Virus record (IMG/VR): IMGVR_UViG_3300009158_000031
Coordinates: 124,001-188,000 of that record
DNA length: 64,000 nucleotides
Reading direction: 5' to 3' (one strand)
Below the pieces are notes generated by a model. That model worked only from the letters and a program-made list of their open reading frames with translations, had not been told where the DNA came from and made no database searches. Numbering within the stretch: the first letter of the stretch is position 1; each line of letters opens with the position of its first letter. Below are positions 9,186-58,441 of this stretch, piece after piece. The translations under genes were made by a program, and so were the position numbers.

Positions 9186-9449
9186 ATGAAAAACTACATA
9201 AACACATTTGAAGAGTTCTTAAATGAATCAATTAACGAAAATGTTTGGGCAGATATAACTAAATCAGCAAAACCTACTAAAGGTCCTTGGACTCTAGTAT
9301 CATCTGATAATAAAAAAGTTTTAGCCCAGAGCACAACTGATAATATACACATGCTTCCTGCTCATTTTGAATCACTGAAACTAAAATTTCCAAAATCAAG
9401 TATTCATATAGAAAGTGCTTCCGGTGAAGTAATTTGGAAAATGAAATAA
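9186..9449 (+). CDS. Putative internal head protein with capsid-targeting sequence (CTS 1)
   Basis: Starts MKNYINTFEEFLNESINE; compare the T4 IPII/IPIII CTS MKTYQEFIAE. Confidence 0.65.
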   Translation: MKNYINTFEEFLNESINENVWADITKSAKPTKGPWTLVSSDNKKVLAQSTTDNIHMLPAHFESLKLKFPKSSIHIESASGEVIWKMK

Positions 9450-9454
9450 TCAAT

Positions 9455-9910: not shown

Positions 9911-9920
9911 TTTAACTAAT

Positions 9921-10526: not shown

Positions 10527-10527
10527 T

Positions 10528-15050: not shown

Positions 15051-16000
15051 AAGTAGCTATTCTAAATTGTTCAGATATTGCAAAACGAAGAATGATTCCG
15101 GCATTTCAGGCAATACCTGAAGTTGAAGTTTCTATCGTATGTAGCCGAGATATTCGTAGAGCTAAACAATATGCTGAAGAATTTGGAATCCCAAAATATA
15201 CGGATAATCCAGATGAAATTATTGGAGTTGATCTAGTTTATATTTCATCTCCTCCATCTGAACATTTTGATGCGATTAAAACATTTATAAAGAGAAAAAT
15301 TAATATTCTTTGCGAAAAATCTCTTACCATAGATGCATATCAAACAACCTATCTAATTAATCTAGCCGATAAACAAGGAGTTCTTATACAAGAAAATTAT
15401 GGATTTCCTTTTCATACTCAGTGGAAATGGATAAAAGAAAACCTAAATAAAATAGGAGATCTTCTTTACATAAGAAGTGGATTTGAATTTCCTCCAAGAA
15501 ATACCGAAACAGATTTTCGTTACAAATCTGCTCTCGGTGGTGGTGCTCTTTTCGATGCCGGTGGATATCCTATTAAATTAGCCTCTTTATTATTGGGAAC
15601 TCCTCAAAAACTTGATGCAGTTACTCATATATCAAAATCACTTGATATTGATCTTTCTGGAAGAACATTTATTATTGATGAAACTGGAAAATCTGCATTT
15701 TTAACTTGGAGTTTTGAATCTACTTATCGTTGTGATGTAGAAATTGTAGGAACTCAAGGAACAATTAAAGCTGGTAAGATATTTACTCCTAGAATTGATG
15801 AACATGTTGAAGTGTCAATTTCACTTATTGGAGAGCCGGTAGAAAGACAACAATTTGTTTGCGATCATTTCGTTGAACTTATTCGAGATTTTATAAATAG
15901 AATAAAGATTAAAGATAACTCTCATCATAAAAGTATATTAAAACAATCAAAATGGCAAACATATGTATCGTCTACTAGTATCAGAACCTTCACTAACTAA
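15047..16000 (+). CDS. Gfo/Idh/MocA oxidoreductase, likely NDP-sugar 3-ketoreductase (SpnN/KijD10-like)
   Basis: CSDIAKRRMIPA, ILCEKSL, GGGALFDAGGYP; coupled to the 2,3-dehydratase by an ATGA overlap. Confidence 0.82.
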   Translation: MKVAILNCSDIAKRRMIPAFQAIPEVEVSIVCSRDIRRAKQYAEEFGIPKYTDNPDEIIGVDLVYISSPPSEHFDAIKTFIKRKINILCEKSLTIDAYQTTYLINLADKQGVLIQENYGFPFHTQWKWIKENLNKIGDLLYIRSGFEFPPRNTETDFRYKSALGGGALFDAGGYPIKLASLLLGTPQKLDAVTHISKSLDIDLSGRTFIIDETGKSAFLTWSFESTYRCDVEIVGTQGTIKAGKIFTPRIDEHVEVSISLIGEPVERQQFVCDHFVELIRDFINRIKIKDNSHHKSILKQSKWQTYVSSTSIRTFTN

Positions 16001-17045
16001 CTTCGAAGAATTTGCAAATATTGCAAAAGAAGTTTGGGCAAGTGGAATCCTAACGCACAATGGACCTAAGGTCAAAGAACTCGAACATCGGTTAAAAGAA
16101 CAATGGCAGATACCTCATCTATCATTAGTTACAAATGGAACTATTGCACTTGAAGTTGCAATGAGAGCTCTAGAACTTCCTAAAGGAAGTGAAATTATTA
16201 CAACTCCATTTACCTGGATTGCAACTGCATCAGCTATTCAATGGCAAGATTATGAACCTATTTTTGTTGACGTTGATCCAAATACTCTTAATATAGATCC
16301 GGCTAAAATTGAAGAAAAAATAACAGATAGAACATCTGCTATTTTAGCGGTTCATGTATTCTCGAATCCATGTGATGTAGATTCTATTCAAGAAATTGCA
16401 GATCGTCGAGGTCTACGAGTTATTTATGATGGTGCTCATGCAGTTGGTGTAAAATATAAAGGAGTAGATCTTTCTCAATTCGGTGATATTACAACTCATT
16501 CATATCATGCAACTAAAATTTATAATAGTGGAGAAGGTGGATCGATTATTACTAGAAATCCAGAGTTAGCTAAAAGAATTGATCGTCTTCGCTTCTTTGG
16601 ACATAATGAAAAGAAAGATATTGTACATGAAGGAACTAATGCTAAAATGCATGAAATCTCTGCTGCAATTGGATTAGCTAATTTAAAAATGTTACCTAAA
16701 ACAATTATGCATAGAAAACTTTTAACTCTTATGTATAAACATAGAATGGAAGGTTTACCGGTTAGATATCAAGCAATCAGCAACGACTCTTATAATTTTT
16801 CATATTTCCCCATCATATTTGAAACAGAAGAACAATGTCTTAAAGTGTATGCGGCATTAGATGCTATTAAAATTATGCCTCGTAGATATTTCTATCCATC
16901 AGTTAACGAATTCAAAATCTTTGATCCTCAATCATGTCCTATTAGCGAAGATATTTCTAGACGAATTCTTTGTCTACCATGTCACGATGGTGTGAAGCTT
17001 ATGGATGTCGATGAAATCTCACACACAATAATCAAAACTTTCTAA
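15963..17045 (+). CDS. vioA: DegT/DnrJ/EryC1 PLP aminotransferase, VioA-like sugar 4-aminotransferase
   Basis: VTNGTIAL, IYDGAHA, SYHATKIYNSGEGG (catalytic Lys retained), GTNAKMHEISAAIGL, RRYFYP. Confidence 0.85.
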   Translation: MYRLLVSEPSLTNFEEFANIAKEVWASGILTHNGPKVKELEHRLKEQWQIPHLSLVTNGTIALEVAMRALELPKGSEIITTPFTWIATASAIQWQDYEPIFVDVDPNTLNIDPAKIEEKITDRTSAILAVHVFSNPCDVDSIQEIADRRGLRVIYDGAHAVGVKYKGVDLSQFGDITTHSYHATKIYNSGEGGSIITRNPELAKRIDRLRFFGHNEKKDIVHEGTNAKMHEISAAIGLANLKMLPKTIMHRKLLTLMYKHRMEGLPVRYQAISNDSYNFSYFPIIFETEEQCLKVYAALDAIKIMPRRYFYPSVNEFKIFDPQSCPISEDISRRILCLPCHDGVKLMDVDEISHTIIKTF

Positions 17046-17046
17046 G

Positions 17047-17661
17047 ATGCATGTAGTTATTGGAGCTAATGGATTAGCTAAACAAGTACTTCCTTTATAC
17101 GACGCAAATCCTAGAGTTATCTTCTTTGATGATACTGAAAATGCAGGAGAGAACCTATATGAACATAAAATTGCACATGATCTTAAATGGGTAAAAGAGT
17201 ATACGTCAATTGGCGAGACAGTAAATTTCTCAATTTGTATAGGAAATCCTAAATGGCGTGAGTATTTTTATTATCTTCTGGTTGATATGGGAGCCACACC
17301 AATTAATATCTTATCGGAATTATCCTCCATTCAAGAGAGATCCGAGATTGACACAGGGAATATCTTTTTAGACTACACTTTAGTAGAAACCGATGTAAAA
17401 ATTGGAAAAGGAAACCTTATAAATTGCTATGCCGGTTTATTTCATGATTCTCAAATAGGAGATTTTAATGAGATTATGCCAGGAGCTAAAATTCTAGGAG
17501 GAGCTAAAATAGGTAACTCTTGTAGAATAGGAACGAATGCAACAATTCTTCCACAAATACATATTTGCTCGAATGTAGTAATTGGAGCTGGAGCAGTGGT
17601 TACTAAAAATATTACTGAACCAGGAACATATATTGGAATTCCTGCAAGGAAGCAAGGATAA
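17047..17661 (+). CDS. NeuD/PglD/VioB-like sugar N-acetyltransferase (left-handed beta-helix)
   Basis: VVIGANGLAK Rossmann-like N-terminus; hexapeptide repeats; ends GAGAVVTKNI..GTYIGIPAR. Confidence 0.88.
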   Translation: MHVVIGANGLAKQVLPLYDANPRVIFFDDTENAGENLYEHKIAHDLKWVKEYTSIGETVNFSICIGNPKWREYFYYLLVDMGATPINILSELSSIQERSEIDTGNIFLDYTLVETDVKIGKGNLINCYAGLFHDSQIGDFNEIMPGAKILGGAKIGNSCRIGTNATILPQIHICSNVVIGAGAVVTKNITEPGTYIGIPARKQG

Positions 17662-17684
17662 ATAACAAAATACAACATATATTA

Positions 17685-18566
17685 ATGGAATTTTTAAAGT
17701 ACAACAACTTCATTCTTAATGAGCAATCTAAATGGGTTAATTTAGACACTATTAATGAAGCTGCACTTACGGCTACTCCAGATAAAAGCGTTAAGTTTGG
17801 TATTTGTATTACCACTTACAAAATTGATGCTGGTGGTAGACAAAATCACATGTCCACCGAAAAAGTTCTGAGAGAATGTTTAGAGTCAGTTAAAACACAG
17901 AGTTGGCCAGAATGGAAAGTCTATATTATGGGAGACGCATATCCACAAGAAGAATGGCCGGAAATTGAAAAACTTGCTGCATCTATCGTTCCAAAAGATA
18001 AACTTTGGATGGATAATCTAAAAACACCAGGAGAAAGAGACAAATATGATGGATCTATTCCACATCTAACAGGAGGAAATACGGCAGCAAACGTGACCAT
18101 CGCTCAAATGAAAAAAGATGGCATTAAGTATTTTGCACGTCTTGACCATGATGATGCTTGGAAAACCGATCATTTAAAAACTCATGCTACTGCTTATACA
18201 CAATTCCCAGAAGTTGTTTATAGTTTAACACAAGCTCGCAAGAAAAGAGTAAAAGGAGATGCCGGATCTTACATGTATTTTCCTGACAAAGGAACATATG
18301 AGAATTCTGAAAATAATTACACATTAGGTCTTGGTGGACAATGTCATTCAGCAATGACTTGGAAATTAGAACCTTTAAAATATATCAAGTATCGTACTTG
18401 GGATCAACAAAAAGCGACACAACCTCGTAGAAAAGAGTGCTTCCCTGGCGATTGGGATAATACTGAAAGAATTAAAAGAATTGTAGAAGATGAAAATAAT
18501 AAACACTCAATGATTTTTGTTCCTAAATTAACTGTAAAATATCGTAACTCTGAAGGAAAATTTTAA
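17685..18566 (+). CDS. GT2-like glycosyltransferase with N-terminal CTS
   Basis: MEFLKYNNFILNE..TINE leader; GICITTY, CLESVKTQS, IMGD, YFARLDHDDAW (DxDD). Confidence 0.75.
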   Translation: MEFLKYNNFILNEQSKWVNLDTINEAALTATPDKSVKFGICITTYKIDAGGRQNHMSTEKVLRECLESVKTQSWPEWKVYIMGDAYPQEEWPEIEKLAASIVPKDKLWMDNLKTPGERDKYDGSIPHLTGGNTAANVTIAQMKKDGIKYFARLDHDDAWKTDHLKTHATAYTQFPEVVYSLTQARKKRVKGDAGSYMYFPDKGTYENSENNYTLGLGGQCHSAMTWKLEPLKYIKYRTWDQQKATQPRRKECFPGDWDNTERIKRIVEDENNKHSMIFVPKLTVKYRNSEGKF

Positions 18567-26264: not shown

Positions 26265-29200
26265 TTGAGCGCTAGACAAGTAAATGCACAAGAAGCAATT
26301 GTTTCCATCACTAGCAAGATGGAAGCGATGCTTCAGCAAGTGCAAACCCAATATGATCAGTCAATTAATTTATTAACGTCATTAAATACAACAATGACGG
26401 TTGATGTTGGGCAGGAGCTTAAGAAGCAAACCTCCTTACTTATGTCCATTGAGGCTAAGATAGGAACCAATGGAGGTAGTGCTGGCGAAGATAAAATGTT
26501 AGGCAAGAATTTAGAAATTCTCTCTAAAGGATTGAGTAAACTTGTTAAAGCGGCTGAAAAAATTAAACCTAAAACTGGCGAACAAGTAAAAGAATTTTTA
26601 GGTAATATAGCTGATGGTCTAGCTAGTTTAACTGATAAAATAGATGAAAAGAAAGCTGAAATTATAGCGAATACGGTTATAACTTTAGCAAAAGGTGTTC
26701 TTCTATTTGGATTAGCAATGACTCTATATGTAATACTCGGACCAACCGCAATGTTAGGTTCAATGCTATTTGGATTAACAATTAGACTCTTATTGAAATC
26801 TGCCGGAGAAGTAGATGAAAATTCGCTTAAAGGAATTGTTGCAGTTGCTGCATTAGGTCTTGGTGTTATATATTTTGGATTAGCAATGGCTTTATATGCA
26901 GTTATTGGTATTCCTGCAATGCTAGGTGCTGTTTTATTTGGATTAACCGTTAGATTATTAGCTAAAACTGCCGGATTAAATGATCCTAAAGTTGCTGCTG
27001 GAATTGTCGGAATTGCTGCATTAGGTCTTGGAGCCATATATTTTGGATTAGCAATGTTGGGTTATGCAATTATCGGTATTCCAGCAATGCTAGGTGCTGT
27101 TTTATTTGGATTAACCGTTAGATTATTAGTGAAAACAGCTGGTTTAAACGATCCTAAAGTTGCTGCCGGAATGCAAGCCTTAATAGGACTTGGTAAAGCT
27201 ATTTTAATATTCGGTTTAGTTATGTTGGCTTATGCAATTATTGGTATTCCTGGATTGATTGGTGCTTTGGTTCTTGCATTAACTCTTAAACTTCTTTCGA
27301 AAAGTATTAAGTCAATGGGATCTAATATGGTCAGAAAAGGAATTATAAATATGGCTTTAGGAGCTATTGCTATTATTCTTCTCGGATTAACTATTATATT
27401 ATTTGCAAAAGAGGTTCCTATAATGAGTTCTCTTTATGTTATTCTTACCATTGGTGCATTTGCTTTAGCCTTCTATATAGTAGGTAAATTCTTTAATGAT
27501 ATATTAAAAGGAGCTCTTGCAGTTGCTGCTATAGGATTAGGTATATCATTCTTAGCCTTAGGTTTATTCTTTTATAAATCAGTTGGAATGACTTGGGAAG
27601 AAACCGCAATGTTAGGGGTTACTATCGCTGGTCTTGGATTAGTAATGGGAGGTGCTGGTGAATTCTTTATGGAAATTATTAAAGGATCCGCTGCAATGAT
27701 AGTCGCCGGAATTGCTCTAATAGTTATTTCTGCGGGTTTACTTGTATTCGCTCAAACTAAATTAACATTTCAAGATGCTGCTATTCTAGGAGCTACCATC
27801 TTAGGACTTGGTGTTGTAATGGGAATTGCCGGTGCTGGACCGGTACCTTTATTTATTGCATTAGGATCTGCCGCAATGATTGTTGCTGGTTTATCTTTAG
27901 TAGTTCTTTCTCTTGGTCTTGGAGCATTCAAGCTAACCGGATTTAAAGTTGAAGATGCTTTATCTTTAGGAGCTGCTATAGGTGCAGTTGGTGTAACTAT
28001 GGGTATTGCCGGATTAGCCTCTCCATTTATTATATTAGGTAGTGCAGCAATGGCTATTGCCGGTGTTGCATTAATGCCTCTTGCATTAGGATTGGCCGTA
28101 TTCAAAGCTATTGGTTGGAAAAAAGGAACCGATGATGAGAGTTTAAAATCTGCATTAGGTTCCGTAATATCTGGTTTTCTTGGAGGAGATATGCCTGGTG
28201 GTATTCTTGCATCAATTAAATTTGCTGCTCAAGCGGCAGCTAGATCGGTTCTTCTATTCATAGCAATTCCGCCATTAATTCTTGCCGGTGTTGCTTTATT
28301 GTCTATCTCTTTAGGATTAGCCGCATTTAAGAAAGCCGGATTTACTTCTTCGGATTCTGCTAATATGGAAGCTGCTATTGGTGGTATCGTTGGAGCATTC
28401 TCATTAGTTACTGATAAAGAACGTCAGAAGAAAATGGGAATCAATGTCGATTGGATGGATTTAATGATTGGTATTATGGCACTTTCACAAGCCGGAAATA
28501 CTCTATCTTCATTAGCAAAAGGAATTCAAGCATTTGCTAATCTTTCAGTTATTGAATATGAGGTGGTTGGTGCTGGAACTAAAAATGCTAAAATCGTTCC
28601 TAAAGGAATTACCAAATTAAGCAAGTCCGATTTTGAATCAGCGGCTTATGGAATGGCACAAGTAATTGGGGCTATTGCCGAACCATTCGCTTTAGTTGGT
28701 AAATTAGAAAAGGGTACACCATCTGGAAATCCTTTCTATGATGCAATATTCGGTGGTGGATTTGTATCTGCCGGTATTGATGCATTATCAAGATCTGGAG
28801 ATACTCTTGTTAATTTAGCAAAAGGAGTACAAGCATTCGCTAATCTCGAAATAACTGAATATGAAGTAATTGGTGCTGGAACTAAAAATGCTAAAATAAT
28901 TCCTAAATCGATTACGAAAATGTCGCCGACAGATTTTGCTGCTGCCGGAGCCAATATAGCAAAAATTATTGCGGTTGTTGCCGAAGCATTCGCTAAAGTA
29001 GGTAAAGATGAAGCTGCATCTGAAGGAGTATTCTCTGGAGGATTCTTATCTAAAGGAGTCGAAGCATTAGCTAACATAGGAGAAAATCTACAAGGAATTA
29101 CTGAATCGGTTATTAAAGTTGCAACAGGAACATTTACTCCAATGACTGCCGTTCAAGACGGAAAAGGTACTAAATTAGTACCTGGAACTCCTATTAAAAT

Positions 29201-30005
29201 TTCTAAGGCAATGTTAGAAGAGGCTGCCAGAACAATTAATAGTGTTATAATGGTTCTAGGACAGGGAATGATGGACTTCGGAACATTCGTTGACGAGAAT
29301 GAAGATTCTATCGACGAAGCTATTGAATACATTCCTACAATGAGTGAAGCCTTAATGAAGATGGTAGAGGTTAATGAAAAATTCTCTAAGATAACAGATG
29401 CAGATAAAGGAGTTAAATCATTTACTAGTTTTAATCAAGCAGTAATGGATGCTTATGATCCAGCCAAGCAGAAAAATCTTCCTCAAACAGCAGGATATAT
29501 GATGCTATTCGTTAAAGGTATTGAAAGACTTGCTGCACCGGCCGATCAATTAGGTAAGGTTGCATCTAACGTAGAACGTATAGAAGCAGCAATGAAAAAT
29601 ATCAAAACTCATGTTAATGGATTTGATATGGAAAGGCTTACTAAAACGGATTCTCTATTTAAGTCAATGGCGATTTTATCAAAGAATCCTGAAGCTATGG
29701 CTGCTAAAATTAATGATACTCTTAAAGTTGCATTTGAAGAATTTGGTAAAGCTCTTACCGAAGCAATTAAAGAATCCGGTGGTGGTGGTGGCGGTGGCGG
29801 TGGTGGAATACTTGAAGGCGTTAAAGATATTTTGACTCCAGGTCCAGCAGGTGCTGCTCCAAAAGCTACCGATCCAAAAGGAAAGGCTGCTCCTGGACCT
29901 GCTCCTCTCACTGCAGAGGCGATTGGAGCTGCTATGTCGAAAGCTTTAAATGCCGCTTCAATTACCATAAAACCGGCAGCAAACGCGGTATTCAAAACCA
30001 CCTAA
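26265..30005 (+). CDS. Tape measure protein
   Basis: 1246 aa, Gly/Ala/Leu-rich amphipathic repeats (56-aa period near 26850-27200, about 100-aa period near 28520/28820); follows the chaperone genes; TTG start uncertain. Confidence 0.8.
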   Translation: MSARQVNAQEAIVSITSKMEAMLQQVQTQYDQSINLLTSLNTTMTVDVGQELKKQTSLLMSIEAKIGTNGGSAGEDKMLGKNLEILSKGLSKLVKAAEKIKPKTGEQVKEFLGNIADGLASLTDKIDEKKAEIIANTVITLAKGVLLFGLAMTLYVILGPTAMLGSMLFGLTIRLLLKSAGEVDENSLKGIVAVAALGLGVIYFGLAMALYAVIGIPAMLGAVLFGLTVRLLAKTAGLNDPKVAAGIVGIAALGLGAIYFGLAMLGYAIIGIPAMLGAVLFGLTVRLLVKTAGLNDPKVAAGMQALIGLGKAILIFGLVMLAYAIIGIPGLIGALVLALTLKLLSKSIKSMGSNMVRKGIINMALGAIAIILLGLTIILFAKEVPIMSSLYVILTIGAFALAFYIVGKFFNDILKGALAVAAIGLGISFLALGLFFYKSVGMTWEETAMLGVTIAGLGLVMGGAGEFFMEIIKGSAAMIVAGIALIVISAGLLVFAQTKLTFQDAAILGATILGLGVVMGIAGAGPVPLFIALGSAAMIVAGLSLVVLSLGLGAFKLTGFKVEDALSLGAAIGAVGVTMGIAGLASPFIILGSAAMAIAGVALMPLALGLAVFKAIGWKKGTDDESLKSALGSVISGFLGGDMPGGILASIKFAAQAAARSVLLFIAIPPLILAGVALLSISLGLAAFKKAGFTSSDSANMEAAIGGIVGAFSLVTDKERQKKMGINVDWMDLMIGIMALSQAGNTLSSLAKGIQAFANLSVIEYEVVGAGTKNAKIVPKGITKLSKSDFESAAYGMAQVIGAIAEPFALVGKLEKGTPSGNPFYDAIFGGGFVSAGIDALSRSGDTLVNLAKGVQAFANLEITEYEVIGAGTKNAKIIPKSITKMSPTDFAAAGANIAKIIAVVAEAFAKVGKDEAASEGVFSGGFLSKGVEALANIGENLQGITESVIKVATGTFTPMTAVQDGKGTKLVPGTPIKISKAMLEEAARTINSVIMVLGQGMMDFGTFVDENEDSIDEAIEYIPTMSEALMKMVEVNEKFSKITDADKGVKSFTSFNQAVMDAYDPAKQKNLPQTAGYMMLFVKGIERLAAPADQLGKVASNVERIEAAMKNIKTHVNGFDMERLTKTDSLFKSMAILSKNPEAMAAKINDTLKVAFEEFGKALTEAIKESGGGGGGGGGGILEGVKDILTPGPAGAAPKATDPKGKAAPGPAPLTAEAIGAAMSKALNAASITIKPAANAVFKTT

Positions 30006-45493: not shown

Positions 45494-46156
45494 ATGGAAA
45501 CGAAGATTGTTTGTATCTCTGATACACATGGTAAACACAAACAAATTCCCGAAGATTGGTTTCCTGAAGGAGATATTATCGTACATGCCGGTGATATTAG
45601 TTCAATGGGTTATTTACACGAAATAGAAGAATTTTGTAAATGGTACTCTAATCTATCATATTCTTATAAGATTCTTATTGCAGGAAATCATGATTGGGGA
45701 TTCCAAACTAAACCTCAGGAAGTAAAAGAAATTCTTGATCGTTATCCAGAAATTACCTACCTACAAGATTCTAGTATAGAAATACGAGGTATTAAATTCT
45801 GGGGTTCTCCATGGCAACCTGAATTTTGTGATTGGGCTTTCAATCTTAAAAGAGGACCTCGAATTCTAGAAAGATGGAAACAAATACCCGAAGATACTCG
45901 AGTACTTATTACTCATGGTCCTGTACAGGGAAGATGTGATATGACATTAAGTGGAGAATTCGTTGGTTGTGAAATGCTTGAAATGGAACTTCATACTAGA
46001 TTAAATGTTGAGCTACATATATGCGGACATATTCATTGTGCTCATGGAGAAACTCATGATGGTAAAACACATTTCATCAATGCCGCAATTCTAAACGAAC
46101 GTTATCAAGTACAATATAAACCGATCGTTTACACCGTTGACCTAAACGACGAATAA
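45494..46156 (+). CDS. Metallophosphoesterase (MPPED/239FB-like)
   Basis: CISDTHG, VHAGD, IAGNHD, GSPWQP, ITHGP, HICGHIH. Confidence 0.92.
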   Translation: METKIVCISDTHGKHKQIPEDWFPEGDIIVHAGDISSMGYLHEIEEFCKWYSNLSYSYKILIAGNHDWGFQTKPQEVKEILDRYPEITYLQDSSIEIRGIKFWGSPWQPEFCDWAFNLKRGPRILERWKQIPEDTRVLITHGPVQGRCDMTLSGEFVGCEMLEMELHTRLNVELHICGHIHCAHGETHDGKTHFINAAILNERYQVQYKPIVYTVDLNDE

Positions 46157-46473: not shown

Positions 46474-46959
46474 ATGGGTCTATTTAATTTCTGGTCATGG
46501 CCAGCTGAACTTATCGATGATATACGACAATGGTTTGTTGTTAGATCAGCACTTAAAGAACCGGCTACTGATGCTGAGTTTAAAGCATTTAAAGATCTTG
46601 AAATCAGAAAAGATAAAATTGGTAGATTATATACCGTCGTAAATTTACCCGAAGAACTTTGGCCATATGAAAAAAAGAATATGGCTTGGCCTTATGTCCT
46701 AGATAAATTAAGAACTGTAGATGAACTTCTAATGAGATTGCGTCTAAACGAACTTCTATTTCCAGATGTTAGACCTATCGAAGATTCATTTGCATATTTG
46801 GTAATTCTTTCTCCATCAATTGAATCCTTTTCGATATGGAAATTTTTAAGATGGTTACTTAATTTATCAGTAACTACCGGAACATTATTTTTAATCGATC
46901 GAATAGTACTTAAACTTTCCGGATTAGGTATACTAGATCACTTCATAACATTATTTTGA
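46474..46959 (+). CDS. Hypothetical protein with C-terminal hydrophobic segment
   Basis: Start at ATG 46474 (MGLFNFWSW). Confidence 0.55.
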   Translation: MGLFNFWSWPAELIDDIRQWFVVRSALKEPATDAEFKAFKDLEIRKDKIGRLYTVVNLPEELWPYEKKNMAWPYVLDKLRTVDELLMRLRLNELLFPDVRPIEDSFAYLVILSPSIESFSIWKFLRWLLNLSVTTGTLFLIDRIVLKLSGLGILDHFITLF

Positions 46960-47678
46960 GAACTACAATAGGAAACCACGGTGCTGGTAGATACTATGTT
47001 GTAGACGAAGAGAAACAAATCAAACTCCCATCTGTCACTACTATACTTGGTGAAATGATGGACAAATCCGGTTTGCTAGAATGGCAAAAACGAGTTGGTG
47101 TTGAAGAGGCAGAAAAAATCGCCAAGAAAGCAGCAAATCGAGGAACATTCATGCATGCCGTTTTAGAGAATTATGTTGATAACTTATTCGTTGCACCTAT
47201 AGAAAATGCATTACAAGAATCTTTTAAAAAGGCAGTAGCCGAAAACGATTTCACTGAAGAAGAATTTGAAATTGGTAAGAACTTATTCTTTAACTTTTAT
47301 CAATCCGACTTTTTTAATAAAATTGATGGAGTTCTTTATCAAGAAGAAGCTCTATGGTCTAATCGAGGTGGTGGTTATGCTGGTCGTATGGACTTAGCAG
47401 TTAGGTATAAAGATCAAAAGAAAAAAGTCGTAGATTATAAAACATCTAAAAAACCTAAAAGAGATGATTGGATTCTAGGTTATAAAATGCAAGTATCCGC
47501 TTATGCAGTTGCGTTATACGATCGATTTGGAATTGTCATAGATGAATGTGAAATATGGATATCTTGTGAGACTGGAGATTTACAAACATTTACACTAACA
47601 CAACCAGATATGAAATTTTATTTCGGTGAATTTATGAAGTTAGTTAAAGGTTATCATGAGAAATTCCCACAGAATTAA
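46956..47678 (+). CDS. PD-(D/E)XK exonuclease (RecB/Cas4-like phage family)
   Basis: LPSVTTILG, RGTFMH, YAGRMDLA, VVDYKTS, YKMQVSAYA. Confidence 0.88.
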   Translation: MRTTIGNHGAGRYYVVDEEKQIKLPSVTTILGEMMDKSGLLEWQKRVGVEEAEKIAKKAANRGTFMHAVLENYVDNLFVAPIENALQESFKKAVAENDFTEEEFEIGKNLFFNFYQSDFFNKIDGVLYQEEALWSNRGGGYAGRMDLAVRYKDQKKKVVDYKTSKKPKRDDWILGYKMQVSAYAVALYDRFGIVIDECEIWISCETGDLQTFTLTQPDMKFYFGEFMKLVKGYHEKFPQN

Positions 47679-47691: not shown

Positions 47692-48345
47692 ATGGCGATA
47701 CCTAAAATTATACATCAAATTTGGATTGGTCCCAAGAAATGCCCTGATAAATTAATACAAACTTGGCGAGATCTACATCCAGAAGAAGATGGTTGGCAAC
47801 ATATACTTTGGACAGATAAAGATGTAGATGATTTCAAAATGAAAAATATCCGTCATTATAATGATATTGAAGAATGGGCAGGAAAAGCAGATGTTTGGCG
47901 ATATGAAATACTTTATCGTTATGGTGGATTCTTTTGTGATGCAGATTCTATTTGCACTAATACATTAGATGATTTTTTCTTTGAACATGATTGTTTTGCT
48001 GGTTTCGAAAATGAACAAGCTAGACCTAATCTAGTGGCAAACGGTTATATCGGTGCTTCAAAAGAAAATCCATTCATGAAAATCCTTATTGATGAGTTAT
48101 ACAAAACTACATCGGTTTCTCATAAATATACTAATCGTATGGCTTGGCAAAATACCGGTCCTCTTTTCTTTACGAACACAATCATTAAACATCAATATCC
48201 AATTTCGGTTTATCCATCATTTGTTTTTATACCTGAACATTATTCAGGAGTCAAATATACAGGAGATAAAAAATCTTACTCTAAACAATTATGGGGTAGT
48301 ACGCAAGAATTTGGAGCTAACCCAAACTTTTATAACGAATTATGA
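47692..48345 (+). CDS. DXD glycosyltransferase (GT32/Gb3-synthase-like)
   Basis: IPKIIHQIWIG, KADVWRYEILYRYGGFFCDAD, TGPLFFT. Confidence 0.9.
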   Translation: MAIPKIIHQIWIGPKKCPDKLIQTWRDLHPEEDGWQHILWTDKDVDDFKMKNIRHYNDIEEWAGKADVWRYEILYRYGGFFCDADSICTNTLDDFFFEHDCFAGFENEQARPNLVANGYIGASKENPFMKILIDELYKTTSVSHKYTNRMAWQNTGPLFFTNTIIKHQYPISVYPSFVFIPEHYSGVKYTGDKKSYSKQLWGSTQEFGANPNFYNEL

Positions 48346-49046
48346 TAGCATCTGTAATTGTTCCTATTTACAATACACCCATTGAATGGCTTAAACTTTC
48401 AATCGAATCGATAAAAGCACAGACATATAAAGATCTGCAAATTTTACTTATTGATGATTGTTCAACCGATCTTGAAGTACAAAAAGCCTGTCAAGAGCTA
48501 GAGGATTCTGATAATAGAATTGAATACTATAGATTAGAAGAAAATCGAGGTATTGCCGGTGCACTTAATGTAGGTTTGCATTATTCGAAATCTGAATGGG
48601 TTTTTAGAATGGATGCCGATGATATTATGTTACCAGGAAGAATTCAATTACAAATGGATTATCTTAAAGAAAATCCAACCGTTGATATTCTTGGTGGTGG
48701 TCTTTTTTATCTAATTAAAAATGAAGATACTTGGAATTATGATCCTAATCCAATAATTCATCCTAATATAATTACTCGTGAAATTGGTAAAAACTCTCAT
48801 TGGTTTATTAATCATCCAACAGTAGTTTACAGAAAATCTAAGATTCGAGAAATTGGTGGTTACGATGAATCTTTACGAGGTCTTCCTGAAGATTATGAAC
48901 TTTGGTGTCGTTCTTTACGTAATGGATTGACCATACATAACATTGCTCTTCCTTTAATATTTCTAAGACTTTCGCCAAAATCACTTTCTCAAAATTTCGA
49001 TTCTAGAGTACTTGATTTTCTAAATCAAAACCAGAAAACCCTATGA
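48342..49046 (+). CDS. GT2 glycosyltransferase
   Basis: VIVPIYNT, IDDCSTD, ALNVGL, RMDADD, NHPTV, EDYELW. Confidence 0.92.
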   Translation: MIASVIVPIYNTPIEWLKLSIESIKAQTYKDLQILLIDDCSTDLEVQKACQELEDSDNRIEYYRLEENRGIAGALNVGLHYSKSEWVFRMDADDIMLPGRIQLQMDYLKENPTVDILGGGLFYLIKNEDTWNYDPNPIIHPNIITREIGKNSHWFINHPTVVYRKSKIREIGGYDESLRGLPEDYELWCRSLRNGLTIHNIALPLIFLRLSPKSLSQNFDSRVLDFLNQNQKTL

Positions 49047-49816
49047 TAACTACTGCATTAATAGGTGGACTTGGAAATTACATGTTCCAAATTGCCACAG
49101 CTCATTCTATCGCTAAAGATGTAAGAACTGATGCCTTTTTTGATTTAAGTAGAACCGGCCAATCACAAAGACACATCAATTATTATTTAGATAATATCTT
49201 CAAAAATGTAAAGTTCGGAACCCCAATCCCGAAATACTTATATAACGAGAAAAAATTCAGTTTTGATACGATCCCAGCAGTAGATGATTTATATTTAAGC
49301 GGATATTTTCAAAGTGAAAAGTATTTTGAAAAATACGCTAAAGAAATACGAGATCTATTTAGATGCAAAGAAACTGAAATTAAATTAAGGGAACATATCT
49401 CACAAATCGATTTTACTTGCTCAATACATGTTAGACGAGGAGATTATCTTCAATATCCGAATAAACACAATCAATCACCTGCAGATTATTATAAAACAGC
49501 AATTCAATTAGTAAAAGATCAATTTCCTAATTATGAAGTAACTTTTCTGGTATTCTCTGATGATATACAATGGTGTAAAAATCATTTCATTGGAATGGAA
49601 TATATGTTCATTGAAGGATTCGAAGATTGGGAAGACATGATACTCATGTCTTTATGTGATGCTAATATTATAACAAATTCCACCTTTTCTTGGTGGGCAG
49701 CTTGGTTAGGTGAAACTCCTAATAAGCTAATCATTGCACCAGAAAAATGGTTTGGTTCAGAAGGACCACAAGATCAACAAGATATTATACCTGAACGATG
49801 GATAAAATTAAGATAA
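49043..49816 (+). CDS. GT11 alpha-1,2-fucosyl/colitosyltransferase
   Basis: GGLGNYMFQ, GYFQSEKYF, SIHVRRGDY, FSDDIQWCK, NSTFSWWAAWL. Confidence 0.92.
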   Translation: MITTALIGGLGNYMFQIATAHSIAKDVRTDAFFDLSRTGQSQRHINYYLDNIFKNVKFGTPIPKYLYNEKKFSFDTIPAVDDLYLSGYFQSEKYFEKYAKEIRDLFRCKETEIKLREHISQIDFTCSIHVRRGDYLQYPNKHNQSPADYYKTAIQLVKDQFPNYEVTFLVFSDDIQWCKNHFIGMEYMFIEGFEDWEDMILMSLCDANIITNSTFSWWAAWLGETPNKLIIAPEKWFGSEGPQDQQDIIPERWIKLR

Positions 49817-50628
49817 GAGATTATGCCTTTGCTCATGCAAAGTACAGTACAGATTTTCAAAACTCTCAATTTATTGAATGGGATAGAGGACCTATAACTG
49901 CTGAAGACAAAGTGGTATTCTATACTGACAATTCATTAGAATTAGTTCACCGAGAATCTTCGCAAAATGCACATTGTAAAAAGATTGCATGGTTGCTAGA
50001 ACCGGTGGATGTATGTCCTCATTCATACGATTTCATCCGAATAACTCGTTATTTTGATTTAGTTCTTTCGCATAACATAGATTTCGTAAATGAAATGCAA
50101 AATCGAGGAGTTGAAGCATTATGGGTACCATTTGGTGGTTGTTGGATAAAACCAGAAGATCAACGAATATATGATAAACATGGAATGACTTCAATCATTG
50201 CATCAGATAAACAAATGACGGTTGGTCATCGTTTACGACACTCAGTCATTGCAGCAACTAGAGATAAACTAACTGTTCGAGGAAGAGGCTATACGCCTGT
50301 TGATTATAAGCTCGATTTACTCAAAGATTTTAGATTCCATGTAGTTATTGAAAACGCTAATATTGCTGGTTGGTTTACTGAAAAGCTAATTGATTGCTTT
50401 AGAACAGGAACCGTTCCTATTTATTGGGGAAATCCTCTGATCGAAGAAATTTTTGATCGTGAAGGAATGATACTTTGCTACAATGAACAACAAATTATTG
50501 ATGCAATAAATTCTGTTACTCTAGAAAAATATGATACGATGAAAGAGGCAATACAACGAAATTTCGAAATTGCACAAACCTACCTAATTGCCGAAGATTA
50601 TATCTATAAAAATATTCTCAATAAATGA
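49798..50628 (+). CDS. GT10-like fucosyltransferase-family protein
   Basis: FRFHVVIEN..GWFTEKLIDCFRTGTVPIYWG. Confidence 0.78.
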   Translation: MDKIKIRDYAFAHAKYSTDFQNSQFIEWDRGPITAEDKVVFYTDNSLELVHRESSQNAHCKKIAWLLEPVDVCPHSYDFIRITRYFDLVLSHNIDFVNEMQNRGVEALWVPFGGCWIKPEDQRIYDKHGMTSIIASDKQMTVGHRLRHSVIAATRDKLTVRGRGYTPVDYKLDLLKDFRFHVVIENANIAGWFTEKLIDCFRTGTVPIYWGNPLIEEIFDREGMILCYNEQQIIDAINSVTLEKYDTMKEAIQRNFEIAQTYLIAEDYIYKNILNK

Positions 50629-51551
50629 AACAAAAAATTCTAATAACTGGATCTAATGGAATGGTTGGTAAAGACCTTATTAGATTAATAGAAGACGAAG
50701 GGTTATACTCAGTAATAGGAGTTCCTTCTAAAGTATATGATCTTAGAGATTCTCAAGAAGTATTTGGTTTATTGAGACTCAATAAACCGGATATTGTAGT
50801 TCATTTAGCTGCAAAAGTCGGAGGAATTGTAGATAACATAGAAAAACCTGCAGAATACACAGAAGATAATTTACTAATGAATACGAACATCGTATCAGCT
50901 TCTCGTAATTTTGGAGTAAAAAGATTAATTGGAATTCTTTCAACTTGTGCATATCCTGATAAAGTTGAAATTTATCCCATGACAGAAGAACAACTTCATG
51001 ATGGTCCACCGGCACCAACTAATTTTGGTTATGGTATATCTAAACGTTGTATGGCATCTCATATAGATGCAATCAATAAACAATATGGATTGGAATATCA
51101 ATATCTAATTCCCTGCAATTTATATGGAGAACACGATAAATTTGATAATCAAAGAGCACATTTCATATCAGCTCTAATCAAAAAGATATTAGATGCTAAA
51201 GAACAAAATGCAGAAGAAGTAACCCTATTTGGTGATGGAACTCCTCTTCGTCAATTTATGCATTCTAGAGATTTAGCTAACATCATATATGAATGTATCA
51301 AAAATGATATAACCGAATCAATGAATGTGGCAACTGAAGATAATTTATCTATTGATGAAATGGCACATATTGCTAGAACTTCTTTAGGTGCCGATCATAT
51401 AAAAATAAAATACGATATCACCAAACCAAATGGTCAATTTCGTAAAGATGTTTCAATACAAAAATTACGTAAACATTTCCCTGACTTTAAGTTCACTACT
51501 TTAAGCGAAGGAATCAAACAAATATATCAAACTTATGCAAAAAGCAATTAA
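50625..51551 (+). CDS. fcl: GDP-L-fucose synthase-like epimerase/reductase (Fcl/WcaG; ColC in this context)
   Basis: ITGSNGMVG, HLAAKVGGI, LSTCAYP, PTNFGYGISKR, PCNLYG, GDGTPLRQF, GQFRKD. Confidence 0.88.
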   Translation: MKQKILITGSNGMVGKDLIRLIEDEGLYSVIGVPSKVYDLRDSQEVFGLLRLNKPDIVVHLAAKVGGIVDNIEKPAEYTEDNLLMNTNIVSASRNFGVKRLIGILSTCAYPDKVEIYPMTEEQLHDGPPAPTNFGYGISKRCMASHIDAINKQYGLEYQYLIPCNLYGEHDKFDNQRAHFISALIKKILDAKEQNAEEVTLFGDGTPLRQFMHSRDLANIIYECIKNDITESMNVATEDNLSIDEMAHIARTSLGADHIKIKYDITKPNGQFRKDVSIQKLRKHFPDFKFTTLSEGIKQIYQTYAKSN

Positions 51552-52713
51552 GTTAGTATCCGACACAATTGATAAGAAAGATCTAAAGGCTCTATCTGAT
51601 TGGATGTTACACTCAGAAACTCCACAATTAACAAAAGGTCCTTTAACAATTGAATTTGAAAAGAATTGGTCAGAATGGTTAGGTGTAAAACATACGACTT
51701 TCGTAAACTCCGGTTCATCTGCAATTCTTTTGGCGCTTGCCGCATTAAAAGAAACAAATCGTTTAAGAAACGAAAAAGTCGTAGTTCCTGCATTGAGTTG
51801 GGTAACCGATGTTAGTTCTGTTATGCAATTAGGAATGACTCCTATTTTATGTGATTGTAATAATGAAGATCTTTCATTAGATCTCGATGATTTAGAGAAG
51901 ATATTTATTGAAGCAAATCCTTCAGTAATGATTTTAGTTTCCGTTCTTGGTCTAGTACCAGATATGAATAATGTTGTTAAGCTTTGTAAAAAATATGGAG
52001 TTTATCTTATTGAAGATGTATGTGAAAGTATGGGATCTTCTTATAATGGAAATAAACTAGGAACCTTTGGTGACATATCTTTATTTTCACTTTACTATGG
52101 ACATCATATTTCAACTATTGAAGGTGGTTTAATTTGTACTAATAACGAAGAGCTAAATACCATAATTCGATCAATGAGATCTCATGGTTGGGATCGCGAT
52201 TGGAACGATAAAACCAAACGAGAATATAGAGATCTATATGATATATCAGAATTTGATTCAATGTATACATTCTATTATCCAGGGTATAATCTCAGATCTA
52301 CTGATTTACAAGCCTTCATTGGTTTACGCCAAATAGGAAAGATCGACGAATTTGCTAAACTTCGTTCGTATAATTTCACGATCTATCAAGAACTTTTATC
52401 AGAATACAATGAATTAGATATTGAATATCGAGAAAATACATTTATTTCTAATTTTGCATATCCTATGGTACATGCAAATCGAGAAAAAATTATTACTGCT
52501 CTTCGAGAAAAAAATATTGAAGTTCGACCTTTAATTGCCGGAAATATGGCAAACAAACCATTTTGGAAAATGAAATATGGTGATCGAGATGATTACTTCT
52601 TCAATTGTGTTGACATTGATAAATGTGGATTCTATCTACCAAATCATCAAGGTTTAATCCGGGAAGACATTGAATTCATATGTTCAATAATTATCAAACA
52701 TGCAAAATCTTAA
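51535..52713 (+). CDS. colD: GDP-4-keto-6-deoxymannose 3-dehydratase (ColD-like PLP enzyme)
   Basis: FVNSGSSA, EDVCES, SLYYGHHISTIEGG (His in place of the catalytic Lys, as in ColD), RSHGW, GYNLRSTDLQA, RPLIAGN. Confidence 0.8.
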   Translation: MQKAIKLVSDTIDKKDLKALSDWMLHSETPQLTKGPLTIEFEKNWSEWLGVKHTTFVNSGSSAILLALAALKETNRLRNEKVVVPALSWVTDVSSVMQLGMTPILCDCNNEDLSLDLDDLEKIFIEANPSVMILVSVLGLVPDMNNVVKLCKKYGVYLIEDVCESMGSSYNGNKLGTFGDISLFSLYYGHHISTIEGGLICTNNEELNTIIRSMRSHGWDRDWNDKTKREYRDLYDISEFDSMYTFYYPGYNLRSTDLQAFIGLRQIGKIDEFAKLRSYNFTIYQELLSEYNELDIEYRENTFISNFAYPMVHANREKIITALREKNIEVRPLIAGNMANKPFWKMKYGDRDDYFFNCVDIDKCGFYLPNHQGLIREDIEFICSIIIKHAKS

Positions 52714-57057: not shown

Positions 57058-57285
57058 ATGTCATACCGAGAATTAATCCCAAATTCAAATTTTTCTAATC
57101 CTCTTAACGAATTAATGTTTAAATTCATGGATCGTTTAGATATGGATGCTCGAGATCGAGAGATCTTCGAGGATTTGGCGTTATTCATTTATCATGAAGG
57201 TAAATTAAAAGGTGCAGAAGAGTACTTAAACGAAATAACTGAAATTAAATTAATAGATAATGGAGAAAACAAAACAGCCGATTAA
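57058..57285 (+). CDS. Hypothetical protein
   Basis: 75-aa ORF. Confidence 0.55.
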   Translation: MSYRELIPNSNFSNPLNELMFKFMDRLDMDARDREIFEDLALFIYHEGKLKGAEEYLNEITEIKLIDNGENKTAD

Positions 57286-58441
57286 CGGCTTACCTACTAT
57301 TGGATTGAGCATCATTGTAAAAAATGAATCCAAAGTAATTGAAAGAATGCTCAATACCGTGCATCCTATACTTGATTACTATTGTGTAATTGATACTGGA
57401 TCTACTGATGGAACGCAAGATATTATTCGCAAATTCTTTGAAGAAAAAGGAATACCCGGTGAAGTAATCGAACATCAATGGGTTAATTTCCAAGATGCTC
57501 GTAATACGGCAATGAATGCCGTAAAAGGTAAAGTAGATTTTGGATTTTGGATAGATGCCGATGAACAATTAACATACGATCCAAGATTTAATTTAATGGC
57601 TTTGAAAATGAGTCTAGCTAAAATCGATGGTGGAAATGTAAAAGTAACTTATGGTGATCAGAATTATTACCGTATGCAATTCTTTCGAACTAATAAACCA
57701 TGGTATTGGTATGGTCCAGTCCACGAGGTTCTTATTAGTGATGAACCACTAATATCAAATGAAGTTCCTGGTCTTGGTGTCCTAGTTACTCCTGATGGTA
57801 ATTCATGGACTTCTGAATCGGTACAATCTAAATATGAAGGTCATGCTAAAATCCTAGAAGATTACGTAGCAAATGATCCCAAGAAAGATCCTCGTTGGTT
57901 ATTCTATTTAGCTCAATCATATAGAGATGCTAATGGTGAAGAAAACCTAAAGAAATCTCTTGGATGGTATACTAAACGTGCTGAAACGCTTAGTGGATTT
58001 TGGGAAGAGGTTTATTATTCAGGTTTAATGGCTGCAACTATTAAAGCTCAATTAAAACATCCAACATCAGAAATTATCGAAGATTATCTTAAGATAGGTA
58101 AAACTAATATCTTCCGTTGTGAACACCTAGTTCCCATCATTATGCATTATCAAGCAATAAAAGAATTTGATATTGCATACATATTCTCATCACATGCAAT
58201 GAAATATGCCGGTAAGAATCCATTCCCTAAAGCAACTTTATTCATCGATAAAAACACTTACAATTGGAAGATTTTTGATCTTCATTGTTTAAGTTGTTTC
58301 TATTCTGGTCGTAAAGAAGAAGGCGAACAAGCATTTAGAAAATTGCTTAAAGCTAAAGAGAAAGGACTTATCCCACAAACGGAATTAGCTAGAATTGAAC
58401 AAAACCGTCAATGGTTTATTAAAGCAAAAAATGGAAAGTAA
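57260..58441 (+). CDS. GT2 glycosyltransferase with TPR repeats
   Basis: LSIIVKNESKVIERML, DTGSTDGT, FQDARN, WIDADE, WYGPVHE; TPR-like PRWLFYLAQSYRD..WYTKR..EEVYYS. Confidence 0.9.
   Translation: MEKTKQPINGLPTIGLSIIVKNESKVIERMLNTVHPILDYYCVIDTGSTDGTQDIIRKFFEEKGIPGEVIEHQWVNFQDARNTAMNAVKGKVDFGFWIDADEQLTYDPRFNLMALKMSLAKIDGGNVKVTYGDQNYYRMQFFRTNKPWYWYGPVHEVLISDEPLISNEVPGLGVLVTPDGNSWTSESVQSKYEGHAKILEDYVANDPKKDPRWLFYLAQSYRDANGEENLKKSLGWYTKRAETLSGFWEEVYYSGLMAATIKAQLKHPTSEIIEDYLKIGKTNIFRCEHLVPIIMHYQAIKEFDIAYIFSSHAMKYAGKNPFPKATLFIDKNTYNWKIFDLHCLSCFYSGRKEEGEQAFRKLLKAKEKGLIPQTELARIEQNRQWFIKAKNGK

What the first reader, a model, noticed from the sequence alone, without database searches (positions are those of the whole stretch)
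47692..52713. GDP-colitose biosynthesis plus four glycosyltransferases
Seen: GT32, GT2, GT11, GT10-like, an Fcl-like reductase and a DegT-family enzyme with SLYYGHHISTIEGG. This has His where true aminotransferases have Lys (compare HATK in the 15963 enzyme), and I see no E1-type Cys cluster. Established: ColD (His variant) plus ColC (Fcl-like) make GDP-L-colitose, and GT11 enzymes transfer fucose or colitose in alpha-1,2 linkage. Inference: the phage builds a colitosylated or fucosylated oligosaccharide. An alternative is that the ColD-like enzyme acts as a C3-dehydrase on the other pathway (SpnQ-like, towards a forosamine-type sugar). No gmd gene is present in the window.
Basis: partly seen in the sequence, partly recalled or inferred. 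Interest (0 to 1): 0.62.

Follow-up and report, generated by a model that had tools for sequence, protein, structure and literature searches.

The report
Phage-borne GDP-colitose pathway with four glycosyltransferases
A large freshwater phage carries a tightly packed six-gene operon that most likely makes the rare sugar colitose (3-deoxy-fucose) and attaches it to a short sugar chain; the core of this operon recurs in hundreds of viral contigs, but what the sugar chain is attached to is unknown.

Summary
Window 47692-52713 holds six overlapping + strand genes: GT32, GT2, GT11, a GT10-type transferase, an Fcl-like reductase, and a DegT enzyme with His in place of the catalytic Lys and no Fe-S cysteine motif. 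The window belongs to a 254-kb myovirus record from freshwater. The "missing" gmd exists, 69 kb downstream in the same genome.

The dehydratase's best solved relative is E. coli ColD (E 1e-52). In a tree it falls in a sister clade of canonical ColD, and the Fe-S enzyme E1 lies outside both. Its reductase partner likewise forms its own clade, apart from ColC and Fcl.

Among the 80 nearest IMG/VR loci the usual order is GT11-GT10-Fcl-like-dehydratase-GMD. GMD is present in 62 of these loci and the Fcl-like gene in 68. No relative lies near a 2,3-dehydratase, so the SpnQ-like alternative is unlikely.

A cultured cyanophage, ACG-2014f, carries the same core under generic names.

GDP-colitose synthesis is well supported by homology and gene context but not shown biochemically. 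The acceptor could be host envelope, virion or DNA; this is open. This is a new, virus-borne member of a known pathway, of moderate interest.

The parts
47692..48345 (+). GT32-type glycosyltransferase (217 aa, DXD motifs, no membrane segment)
   Evidence: PF04488 E 7.9e-12. DAD at residue 83 and no hydrophobic segment. A 40%-identical homologue sits in the megaphage cassette L007.
48342..49046 (+). GT2-type glycosyltransferase (234 aa)
   Evidence: PF00535 E 4.6e-32. Overlaps the upstream gene by 4 nt.
49043..49816 (+). GT11 alpha-1,2-fucosyl/colitosyl-type transferase (257 aa)
   Evidence: PF01531 E 3.3e-31. 30% identical to the GT11 gene of the E. coli O55 cluster, which RefSeq annotates as alpha-1,2-fucosyltransferase. 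HVRRGD motif. Present in 53 of 80 related viral loci.
49798..50628 (+). GT10-type (alpha-1,3/4-fucosyltransferase-like) transferase, compact 276-aa form
   Evidence: PF00852 24.1 bits. H. pylori FucT 2nzw E 8e-10. Model pLDDT 96 with best folds 2nzy and FUT9. E185, N186 and K196 are invariant in 44 homologues. Present in 47 of 80 viral loci.
50625..51551 (+). Fcl/ColC-like GDP-4-keto-sugar epimerase-reductase (308 aa)
   Evidence: Epimerase family E 5e-54; the Fcl model scores 225 bits, below cut-off. E. coli O55 ColC scores 185 bits and E. coli Fcl 153 bits. Falls in its own clade of partners of clade-B dehydratases. Overlaps the dehydratase gene by 17 nt.
51535..52713 (+). ColD-like PMP-dependent sugar 3-dehydratase (392 aa), His in place of Lys, no Fe-S motif
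   Evidence: Best PDB match is ColD 2gms, E 1e-52, over residues 7-385. The tree places it in a sister clade of canonical ColD, with E1 outside. GMD and an Fcl-like gene are adjacent in relatives.
52102..52104 (+). Codon of His190, the predicted catalytic base
   Evidence: Aligned with ColD His188. It is H in all 81 members of the His clade and K in the aminotransferase outgroups. Codon CAT.

Best explanation
The six genes form one operon of a freshwater jumbo myovirus.

Proposed pathway. Host GDP-mannose is converted by the phage's own GMD, encoded 69 kb away, into GDP-4-keto-6-deoxy-D-mannose. The His-type DegT enzyme removes the 3-hydroxyl by the ColD mechanism: a PMP Schiff base forms, His190 acts as the base, and the cofactor is recharged from glutamate without an Fe-S partner. 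The overlapping Fcl-like enzyme then epimerises C5 and reduces C4, giving GDP-L-colitose. It may also make some GDP-L-fucose directly from the GMD product.

Proposed use. Four soluble glycosyltransferases build a short oligosaccharide in the cytoplasm. GT32 and GT2 would lay down the backbone. The GT11 and GT10-type enzymes would add the deoxyhexose in alpha-1,2 and alpha-1,3/4 linkage, giving a Lewis-type cap.

Shown: the gene families, the His substitution, the lack of the Fe-S motif, operon packing, gene linkage in relatives, and the presence of GMD.

Inferred: the substrate, the stereochemistry of the product, the order of sugar transfers, and the acceptor. My guess for the acceptor is a host envelope glycan, ahead of virion proteins and then DNA.
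For: - Phage identity: terminase and tail sheath lie in the window, and the record is a 254-kb virus record.
- Families of all six genes.
- His190 aligns with ColD His188 and is invariant in the His clade. Only one Cys follows it, against five in Yersinia E1.
- Tree: the Fe-S-less His clade has 97 support. It splits into canonical ColD (99) and the window's clade (93), with E1 outside.
- Same gene order and overlap as colC-colD in E. coli O55:H7.
- GMD is in the genome: 384 bits on TIGR01472, and the top PDB matches are all GMD at about 300 bits, against 136 for RMD.
- In the 80 nearest IMG/VR loci, an Fcl-like gene occurs in 68, GMD in 62, GT11 in 53 and GT10 in 47, usually in the order GT11-GT10-Fcl-DegT-GMD. 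The same holds on the 587-kb and 640-kb phage-like contigs.
- Cyanophage ACG-2014f has GMD, Fcl-like, His-DegT and GT11 in a row.
- Genes overlap by 4-19 nt and no GT has a membrane segment.
- The review PMC8987622 states that ColD lacks the Fe-S cluster that E1 and SpnQ have, and that the His replaces the Lys.
Against: - The dehydratase is only 29% identical to E. coli ColD and lies outside the clade that holds the characterised enzyme. E1 scores nearly as well by HMMER, 162 bits against 183.
- The reductase is not in the canonical ColC clade. In the column of Fcl His179 it keeps His, where E. coli ColC has Tyr, so it could be a plain GDP-fucose synthase.
- gmd is not in the operon in this phage.
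- No ManC/ManB-type nucleotidyltransferase is in the record, which is 83% complete.
- No product, transcript boundary or acceptor has been observed. The RNA evidence consists only of short contigs in metatranscriptome libraries.
Confidence: 0.65

Rival explanations
1. The Fcl-like enzyme is an ordinary GDP-L-fucose synthase and the glycan is fucosylated. The His-DegT enzyme then has a side role, is a minor branch, or both fucose and colitose are made.
For: The catalytic Cys and His of Fcl are both kept, whereas E. coli ColC has Tyr in the His column. Human Fcl scores 195 bits, slightly above E. coli ColC at 185. Cyanophage S-SCSM1 is reported to carry gmd, fcl and fucosyltransferases.
Against: The reductase gene overlaps the dehydratase gene, and this pairing is kept in 68 of 80 viral loci. 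It falls in a clade made only of partners of such dehydratases, apart from E. coli Fcl. The His column varies within that clade (H, G, N, Y), so it does not decide the matter.
Confidence: 0.15
2. The pair makes a different GDP-linked 3,6-dideoxy or 3-deoxy-4-amino sugar. Examples are a product without C5 epimerisation or with the other C4 configuration. This would fit because both enzymes belong to uncharacterised sister clades.
For: Both enzymes lie outside the clades that hold the characterised ColD and ColC. Identity is 29% and 36%.
Against: The catalytic Cys used for epimerisation in Fcl is invariant. The transferases that travel with the pair are the two fucosyl-type families, which handle L-fucose-like donors.
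Confidence: 0.12
3. The dehydratase acts like SpnQ on the dTDP pathway encoded at 13689-17661, removing the 3-OH of dTDP-4-keto-2,6-dideoxyglucose towards a forosamine-type amino sugar.
For: The window does encode a 2,3-dehydratase, a GFO-type ketoreductase, a Lys-type aminotransferase and an N-acetyltransferase.
Against: SpnQ and E1 carry a four-Cys Fe-S motif that is absent here. The gene lies 35 kb from that cluster and overlaps an Fcl-like gene. None of the 87 related loci checked has a 2,3-dehydratase or GFO homologue, while GMD is adjacent in most related loci.
Confidence: 0.03

Closest known systems
GDP-L-colitose pathway of E. coli O55/O111 (Gmd, ColD, ColC) with the GT11 transferase of the O55 cluster (WbgN)
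   Same: Same three enzyme families. The reductase gene is immediately upstream of and overlapping the His-type dehydratase gene. A GT11 transferase is in the cluster. There is no Fe-S motif.
   Different: Identity is 29% (dehydratase), 36% (reductase) and 30% (GT11). Both enzymes fall in sister clades. The genes are on a phage, with no wzx, wzy or manB/manC beside them. gmd is displaced by 69 kb. A GT10-type enzyme is added. That WbgN transfers colitose is from my own knowledge, not tested here.
E1 (RfbH/DdhC, CDP pathway) and SpnQ (dTDP pathway) 3-dehydrases
   Same: Same DegT fold and the same Lys-to-His change.
   Different: Those enzymes carry a [2Fe-2S] motif and need a reductase partner, and they are 437-460 aa long. 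The window enzyme has neither the motif nor the extra length. It groups with ColD to the exclusion of E1.
Glycan ('LPS/cell-wall') auxiliary genes of T4-like cyanophages, e.g. S-SCSM1 (gmd, fcl, fucosyltransferases) and ACG-2014f
   Same: A large myovirus carrying gmd, an Fcl-like gene, GT11 and further transferases in one block.
   Different: The S-SCSM1 paper describes only a GDP-fucose route. The ACG-2014f record calls the His-type enzyme an 'aminotransferase'. Two full-text searches found no paper that ties colitose to phage-encoded synthesis.
Lewis-antigen synthesis on Helicobacter pylori LPS (GT25 galactosyltransferase, GT11 FutC, GT10 FutA/B); colitose-bearing Lewis-like glycan of Vibrio cholerae O139
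   Same: The same trio of transferase families. GT25 lies next to the phage gmd and inside the cassette in 15 of 80 relatives. The GT10 part matches H. pylori FucT.
   Different: The phage enzymes are much shorter and lack the heptad-repeat tail. The acceptor and linkages are untested. The comparison rests on my own knowledge of those systems.

Membership tests
ColD (GDP-4-keto-6-deoxy-D-mannose 3-dehydratase) | DegT / fold-type I aminotransferase scaffold, about 390 aa | tested here: met
   PF01041 234 bits. ColD 2gms E 1e-52 over residues 7-385 of 392.
ColD (GDP-4-keto-6-deoxy-D-mannose 3-dehydratase) | Catalytic Lys replaced by His (ColD His188) | tested here: met
   His190 lies in the column changed in the H188N and H188K crystal mutants. 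It is invariant in alignment A1 and in all 81 His-clade rows.
ColD (GDP-4-keto-6-deoxy-D-mannose 3-dehydratase) | No [2Fe-2S] cysteine motif | tested here: met
   One Cys in the 85 residues after the His, against five in Yersinia E1. Cysteines are at 106, 108, 151, 163, 201, 358, 364 and 383. The feature is as defined in PMC8987622.
ColD (GDP-4-keto-6-deoxy-D-mannose 3-dehydratase) | Groups within the clade that holds the characterised enzyme | tested here: not met
   It is in a sister clade (support 93) of the canonical ColD clade (99). Both together (97) exclude E1. Identity to E. coli ColD is 29%.
ColD (GDP-4-keto-6-deoxy-D-mannose 3-dehydratase) | Genetically linked to gmd and an Fcl-like reductase | tested here: met
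   The Fcl-like gene overlaps it. GMD is in the genome. In 80 viral relatives, GMD is present in 62 and the Fcl-like gene in 68.
ColD (GDP-4-keto-6-deoxy-D-mannose 3-dehydratase) | Converts GDP-4-keto-6-deoxymannose to the 3-deoxy product with glutamate-driven PMP recycling | not testable with these tools
   Needs an enzyme assay.
ColC (GDP-L-colitose synthase) | Extended SDR of the Fcl type with the catalytic Cys and the Tyr-x3-Lys motif | tested here: met
   Aligned to human and E. coli Fcl, with STC and YGISK kept. The Cys column is conserved in 52 of 54 homologues.
ColC (GDP-L-colitose synthase) | Groups with characterised ColC rather than Fcl | tested here: not met
   It forms a separate clade (98) made of partners of clade-B dehydratases. 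The canonical ColC clade (99) and E. coli Fcl lie elsewhere. Bit scores are 185 for ColC and 153 for E. coli Fcl.
ColC (GDP-L-colitose synthase) | Gene directly upstream of the dehydratase gene | tested here: met
   17-nt overlap. Same order as in E. coli O55.
E1 / SpnQ type 3-dehydrase | Four-Cys [2Fe-2S] motif and a pathway context of CDP-glucose or dTDP 2,3-dehydratase genes | tested here: not met
   No such motif. No 2,3-dehydratase lies near any relative.
GT11 (alpha-1,2-fucosyl/colitosyltransferase) | PF01531 above cut-off and the HxRRxD donor motif | tested here: met
   109 bits against a cut-off of 23.9. HVRRGD at residue 129.
GT11 (alpha-1,2-fucosyl/colitosyltransferase) | Donor is GDP-colitose rather than GDP-fucose | not testable with these tools
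   Needs an assay.
GT10 (alpha-1,3/4-fucosyltransferase) | GT-B fold with the C-terminal EN...TEK nucleotide-sugar motif | tested here: met
   2nzw E 8e-10 with the motif aligned. E185, N186 and K196 are invariant. The best fold matches are 2nzy and FUT9, TM 0.55-0.60. Pfam is only borderline.

The most novel reading that the evidence does not exclude
A largely virus-borne pair of ColC/ColD-like enzymes, always travelling with GT11 and GT10-type transferases (and often GT25), makes a colitose-capped Lewis-type glycan. Phages ranging from about 60 kb to 640-kb megaphage-like contigs would attach it to their own virions (or DNA) rather than to the host envelope. This would be self-glycosylation with a 3,6-dideoxyhexose, as a common trait of aquatic phages.
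Probability: 0.2. Interest if true: 0.75.

Novelty: new member of a known kind. Interest (0 to 1): 0.5.

Why it matters
Large aquatic phages have long been known to carry "LPS" or sugar genes without a defined product. Here the product can be named and tested: a GDP-3,6-dideoxyhexose plus two fucosyl-type transfers.

The module is not a one-off. At least 580 IMG/VR stretches encode the dehydratase, and the five-gene core recurs from cyanophages to contigs of 587-640 kb.

A cultured phage, Synechococcus phage ACG-2014f, carries the core, so sugar analysis of its virions and infected cells could answer what these genes are for.

The two enzymes also define uncharacterised sister clades of ColD and ColC. 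These clades are currently mis-named in databases as aminotransferase or CDP-hexulose dehydrase.

Tried and rejected
- Megablast of the region against GenBank phages found nothing. By tblastn no cultured phage is closer than 39%.
- I tried to reach the E. coli O55 colitose cluster through a distant DNA search with the phage gmd. It returned only short gmd pieces in other serotypes. I reached the cluster instead by searching the CB9615 chromosome with the protein.
- No NTP_transferase (ManC or RmlA) is in the record, so the phage must draw on host GDP-mannose, or the gene lies in the missing 17%.
- No psbA, so the phage is not an obvious cyanophage.
- The Cook and Holden structural paper, which lists the GDP contacts, is not held. 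I therefore did not compare substrate-contact residues one by one.
- Sigma-70-type promoter matches were below the shuffled expectation (33 found against a mean of 41.8) and say nothing about promoters.
- Laying metatranscriptome contigs gave only 151-266-nt pieces on GT2, GT11, GT10-like and the dehydratase. The tool warns that DNA can be present in such libraries, so I do not count this as proof of transcription.
- The Fcl His179 column looked at first like a ColC-versus-Fcl marker (Tyr in E. coli ColC). It varies too much within clades to be used.
- The SpnQ-like reading was considered and rejected (see the rival explanations).


Full report
**What the window is.** It is bases 124001-188000 of a 254,393-base IMG/VR virus record, linear and estimated 83% complete. 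It encodes a large terminase and a tail sheath, split topoisomerase II subunits, and genes almost all on the + strand at about 32% G+C. It is therefore a jumbo myovirus. Near-identical DNA occurs in many freshwater and lake metagenomes from 21 studies. No psbA is present. The host is unknown.

**The observation.** Six ORFs fill 47692-52713 and overlap each other by 4, 4, 19, 4 and 17 nt, so they are packed as one operon.
- Pfam assigns them to GT32, GT2, GT11, GT10 (borderline), the Epimerase/GDP_Man_Dehyd SDR family, and DegT.
- The GT11 protein has the HVRRGD donor motif.
- The weak GT10 call was checked in three ways. The C-terminal half matches H. pylori alpha1,3-fucosyltransferase at E 8e-10 with the EN...TEK motif aligned. 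These residues are invariant in 44 homologues. A model with pLDDT 96 finds 2nzy (FucT with GDP-fucose) and human FUT9 as its best fold matches.
- None of the four transferases has a membrane segment.
- The DegT protein carries SLYYGHHISTIEGG at residues 185-198.

**The dehydratase.** Its best solved relative is E. coli ColD (2gms, E 1e-52, aligned end to end). The first His of the HH pair falls in the column that is N or K in the ColD H188N and H188K mutant structures. E1 follows at 2.5e-46 and perosamine synthases at 1e-36.

I fetched reference genes from E. coli O55:H7 CB9615. There the Fcl-family gene and the DegT gene lie in the same order, overlapping, beside gnd, with a GT11 gene further along. 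Identity to that ColD is 29%.

A tree of 89 homologues was built from 80 bacterial or archaeal genome loci, the viral loci and Lys-type outgroups. It puts all His-type proteins in one clade (99).
- A Yersinia E1 (437 aa, five Cys after the His) is sister to the Fe-S-less proteins (97).
- The Fe-S-less proteins split into the canonical ColD clade, with E. coli O55 and Yersinia similis (99), and a second clade (93) that holds the window enzyme.
- The window protein has a single Cys in the stretch where E1 has its cluster ligands.

According to the review PMC8987622, absence of the cluster separates the ColD mechanism from that of E1 and SpnQ. The enzyme therefore works like ColD, but it is not a member of the characterised ColD clade.

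**The reductase.** It aligns over its full length with GDP-fucose synthases, with the catalytic Cys and the Tyr-x3-Lys motif in place. It scores 185 bits against E. coli ColC and 153 against E. coli Fcl. In a tree of 54 homologues it sits in a clade (98) made up of genes that lie directly upstream of clade-B dehydratases. This clade is apart from the canonical ColC clade (99) and from E. coli Fcl. The column of Fcl His179 is His here, Tyr in E. coli ColC and Gly in the megaphage relatives. It is too variable to be a marker. A contribution to GDP-fucose synthesis cannot be excluded.

**The missing gmd.** The record holds three SDR genes. One of them, at G000:C1:245804-246748, scores 384 bits on the gmd model (cut-off 415). 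Its top PDB matches are all GDP-mannose 4,6-dehydratases at about 300 bits, against 136 for RMD. It lies 69 kb downstream of the operon, next to a GT25 gene, an FkbM-type methyltransferase and a carbamoyltransferase. No sugar nucleotidyltransferase is in the record, so GDP-mannose would come from the host.

**Relatives.**
- The protein search found homologues of 60-66% identity. Two of them lie on 587-kb and 640-kb contigs that also carry gp32, RNase T and ribonucleotide reductase genes. There the cassette reads gmd, several transferases (GT10, GT2, GT25, GT32), GT11, Fcl-like, DegT.
- A profile scan of IMG/VR hit at least 580 viral stretches.
- In the best 80 loci (52-100% identity) an Fcl-like gene is present in 68, GMD in 62, GT11 in 53, GT10-type in 47 and GT25 in 15. 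The usual order is GT11-GT10-Fcl-DegT-GMD on one strand.
- Other frequent neighbours are PhoH and further GT1/GT4- and GT2-type transferases.
- Some of the closest "bacterial" hits are short MAG contigs that share many genes with the viral loci.
- In bacterial genomes the canonical clade shows gmd-colC-colD arrays, as expected.
- No homologue of the window's 2,3-dehydratase or GFO reductase occurs in any of the 87 loci examined.

**Precedent.** No GenBank phage is closer than 39%. Even so, Synechococcus phage ACG-2014f has, in a row, a GMD (65% to E. coli), an Fcl-like gene, a His-type DegT labelled "aminotransferase" and a GT11. These are followed by methyl-, sulfo- and glycosyltransferases. 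The S-SCSM1 paper lists gmd, fcl and fucosyltransferases as cell-wall auxiliary genes. Two full-text searches found no paper linking colitose with phage-encoded synthesis.

**Mechanism proposed.** GMD makes GDP-4-keto-6-deoxymannose. The His-type enzyme removes the 3-OH by the ColD route. The Fcl-like enzyme epimerises and reduces to give GDP-L-colitose. GT32 and GT2 build a backbone, and the GT11 and GT10-type enzymes add the deoxyhexose. The trio GT25, GT11 and GT10 is the enzyme set of Lewis-antigen synthesis in H. pylori, and V. cholerae O139 has a colitose-bearing Lewis-like glycan. Both comparisons are from my own knowledge and are offered as leads.

**The acceptor is not shown.** All the transferases are soluble, and no flippase or polymerase lies beside them. 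My ranking is a host lipid-linked or LPS-core glycan first, then virion proteins, then DNA. This ranking is my judgement only.

**Expression.** Short contigs from three lake metatranscriptome libraries lie on four of the six genes at 93-100% identity. Contigs cannot exclude carried-over DNA.

**Verdict.** The SpnQ-like alternative is unlikely. The feature is a new, virus-borne member of the known colitose pathway and of the known class of phage glycan genes. It is widespread and testable in a cultured phage, and its biological role is unresolved.

Noticed in passing
window 13689-18566: A second sugar cluster: NDP-hexose 2,3-dehydratase (453 aa), GFO-type ketoreductase, Lys-type DegT aminotransferase (HATK), PglD-like hexapeptide N-acetyltransferase and a GT2-like gene. 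This suggests a dTDP-4-acetamido-2,4,6-trideoxyhexose route. It is followed by a non-specific endonuclease and a NUDIX gene.
   Followed up: partly
L099:4015-8782 (G000:C1 about 242,000-246,750): The phage gmd sits with a GT25 gene, an FkbM/RfbT-type methyltransferase, a NodU/CmcH-type carbamoyltransferase and a 297-aa unknown. The glycan may therefore also be methylated or carbamoylated.
   Followed up: partly
L098:154-7536 (G000:C1 about 3,150-10,540): This stretch holds an NAD-dependent ligase, a short divergent thymidylate-synthase-like protein (236 aa; Pfam 49 bits, PHROG 124 bits), a 438-aa unknown, a thymidylate-kinase-like protein, a 385-aa nucleotide-sugar SDR and a 422-aa unknown. 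A normal ThyA lies elsewhere, at 204,810. This could be a base-modification cluster, which would bear on a DNA acceptor.
   Followed up: partly
window 57260-58441: A further GT2-type glycosyltransferase (393 aa; PHROG beta-1,4-glycosyltransferase) lies 4.5 kb downstream of the operon.
   Followed up: no
L006 and L007 (ENA contigs of 587,058 and 640,004 bases): These very large contigs carry gp32, RNase T, ribonucleotide reductase and a ClpB-like ATPase. They hold the same cassette with gmd included, and look like megaphages.
   Followed up: partly
L097:6044-15997 (Synechococcus phage ACG-2014f, NC_026927.1): A cultured cyanophage carries GMD, an Fcl-like gene, a His-type DegT annotated 'aminotransferase' and a GT11. 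These are followed by a methyltransferase, a galactose-3-O-sulfotransferase and more transferases, just upstream of a tail fibre gene.
   Followed up: partly
window 26265-30005: A 1246-aa ORF with no PHROG match lies in the only stretch of raised G+C (0.36-0.39, with strong GC skew) in the window.
   Followed up: no
window 46956-47678 and 45494-46156: Directly upstream of the operon lie a PD-(D/E)XK (Cas4-like) nuclease and a calcineurin-type phosphoesterase. The operon thus sits among DNA-metabolism genes, not structural genes.
   Followed up: no
L013:11865-12788 (E. coli O55:H7 ColC): E. coli ColC has Tyr where Fcl has the proposed acid/base His179. Across 54 homologues this column is H, Y, W, N or G, while the Cys column is conserved in 52 of 54.
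   Followed up: partly
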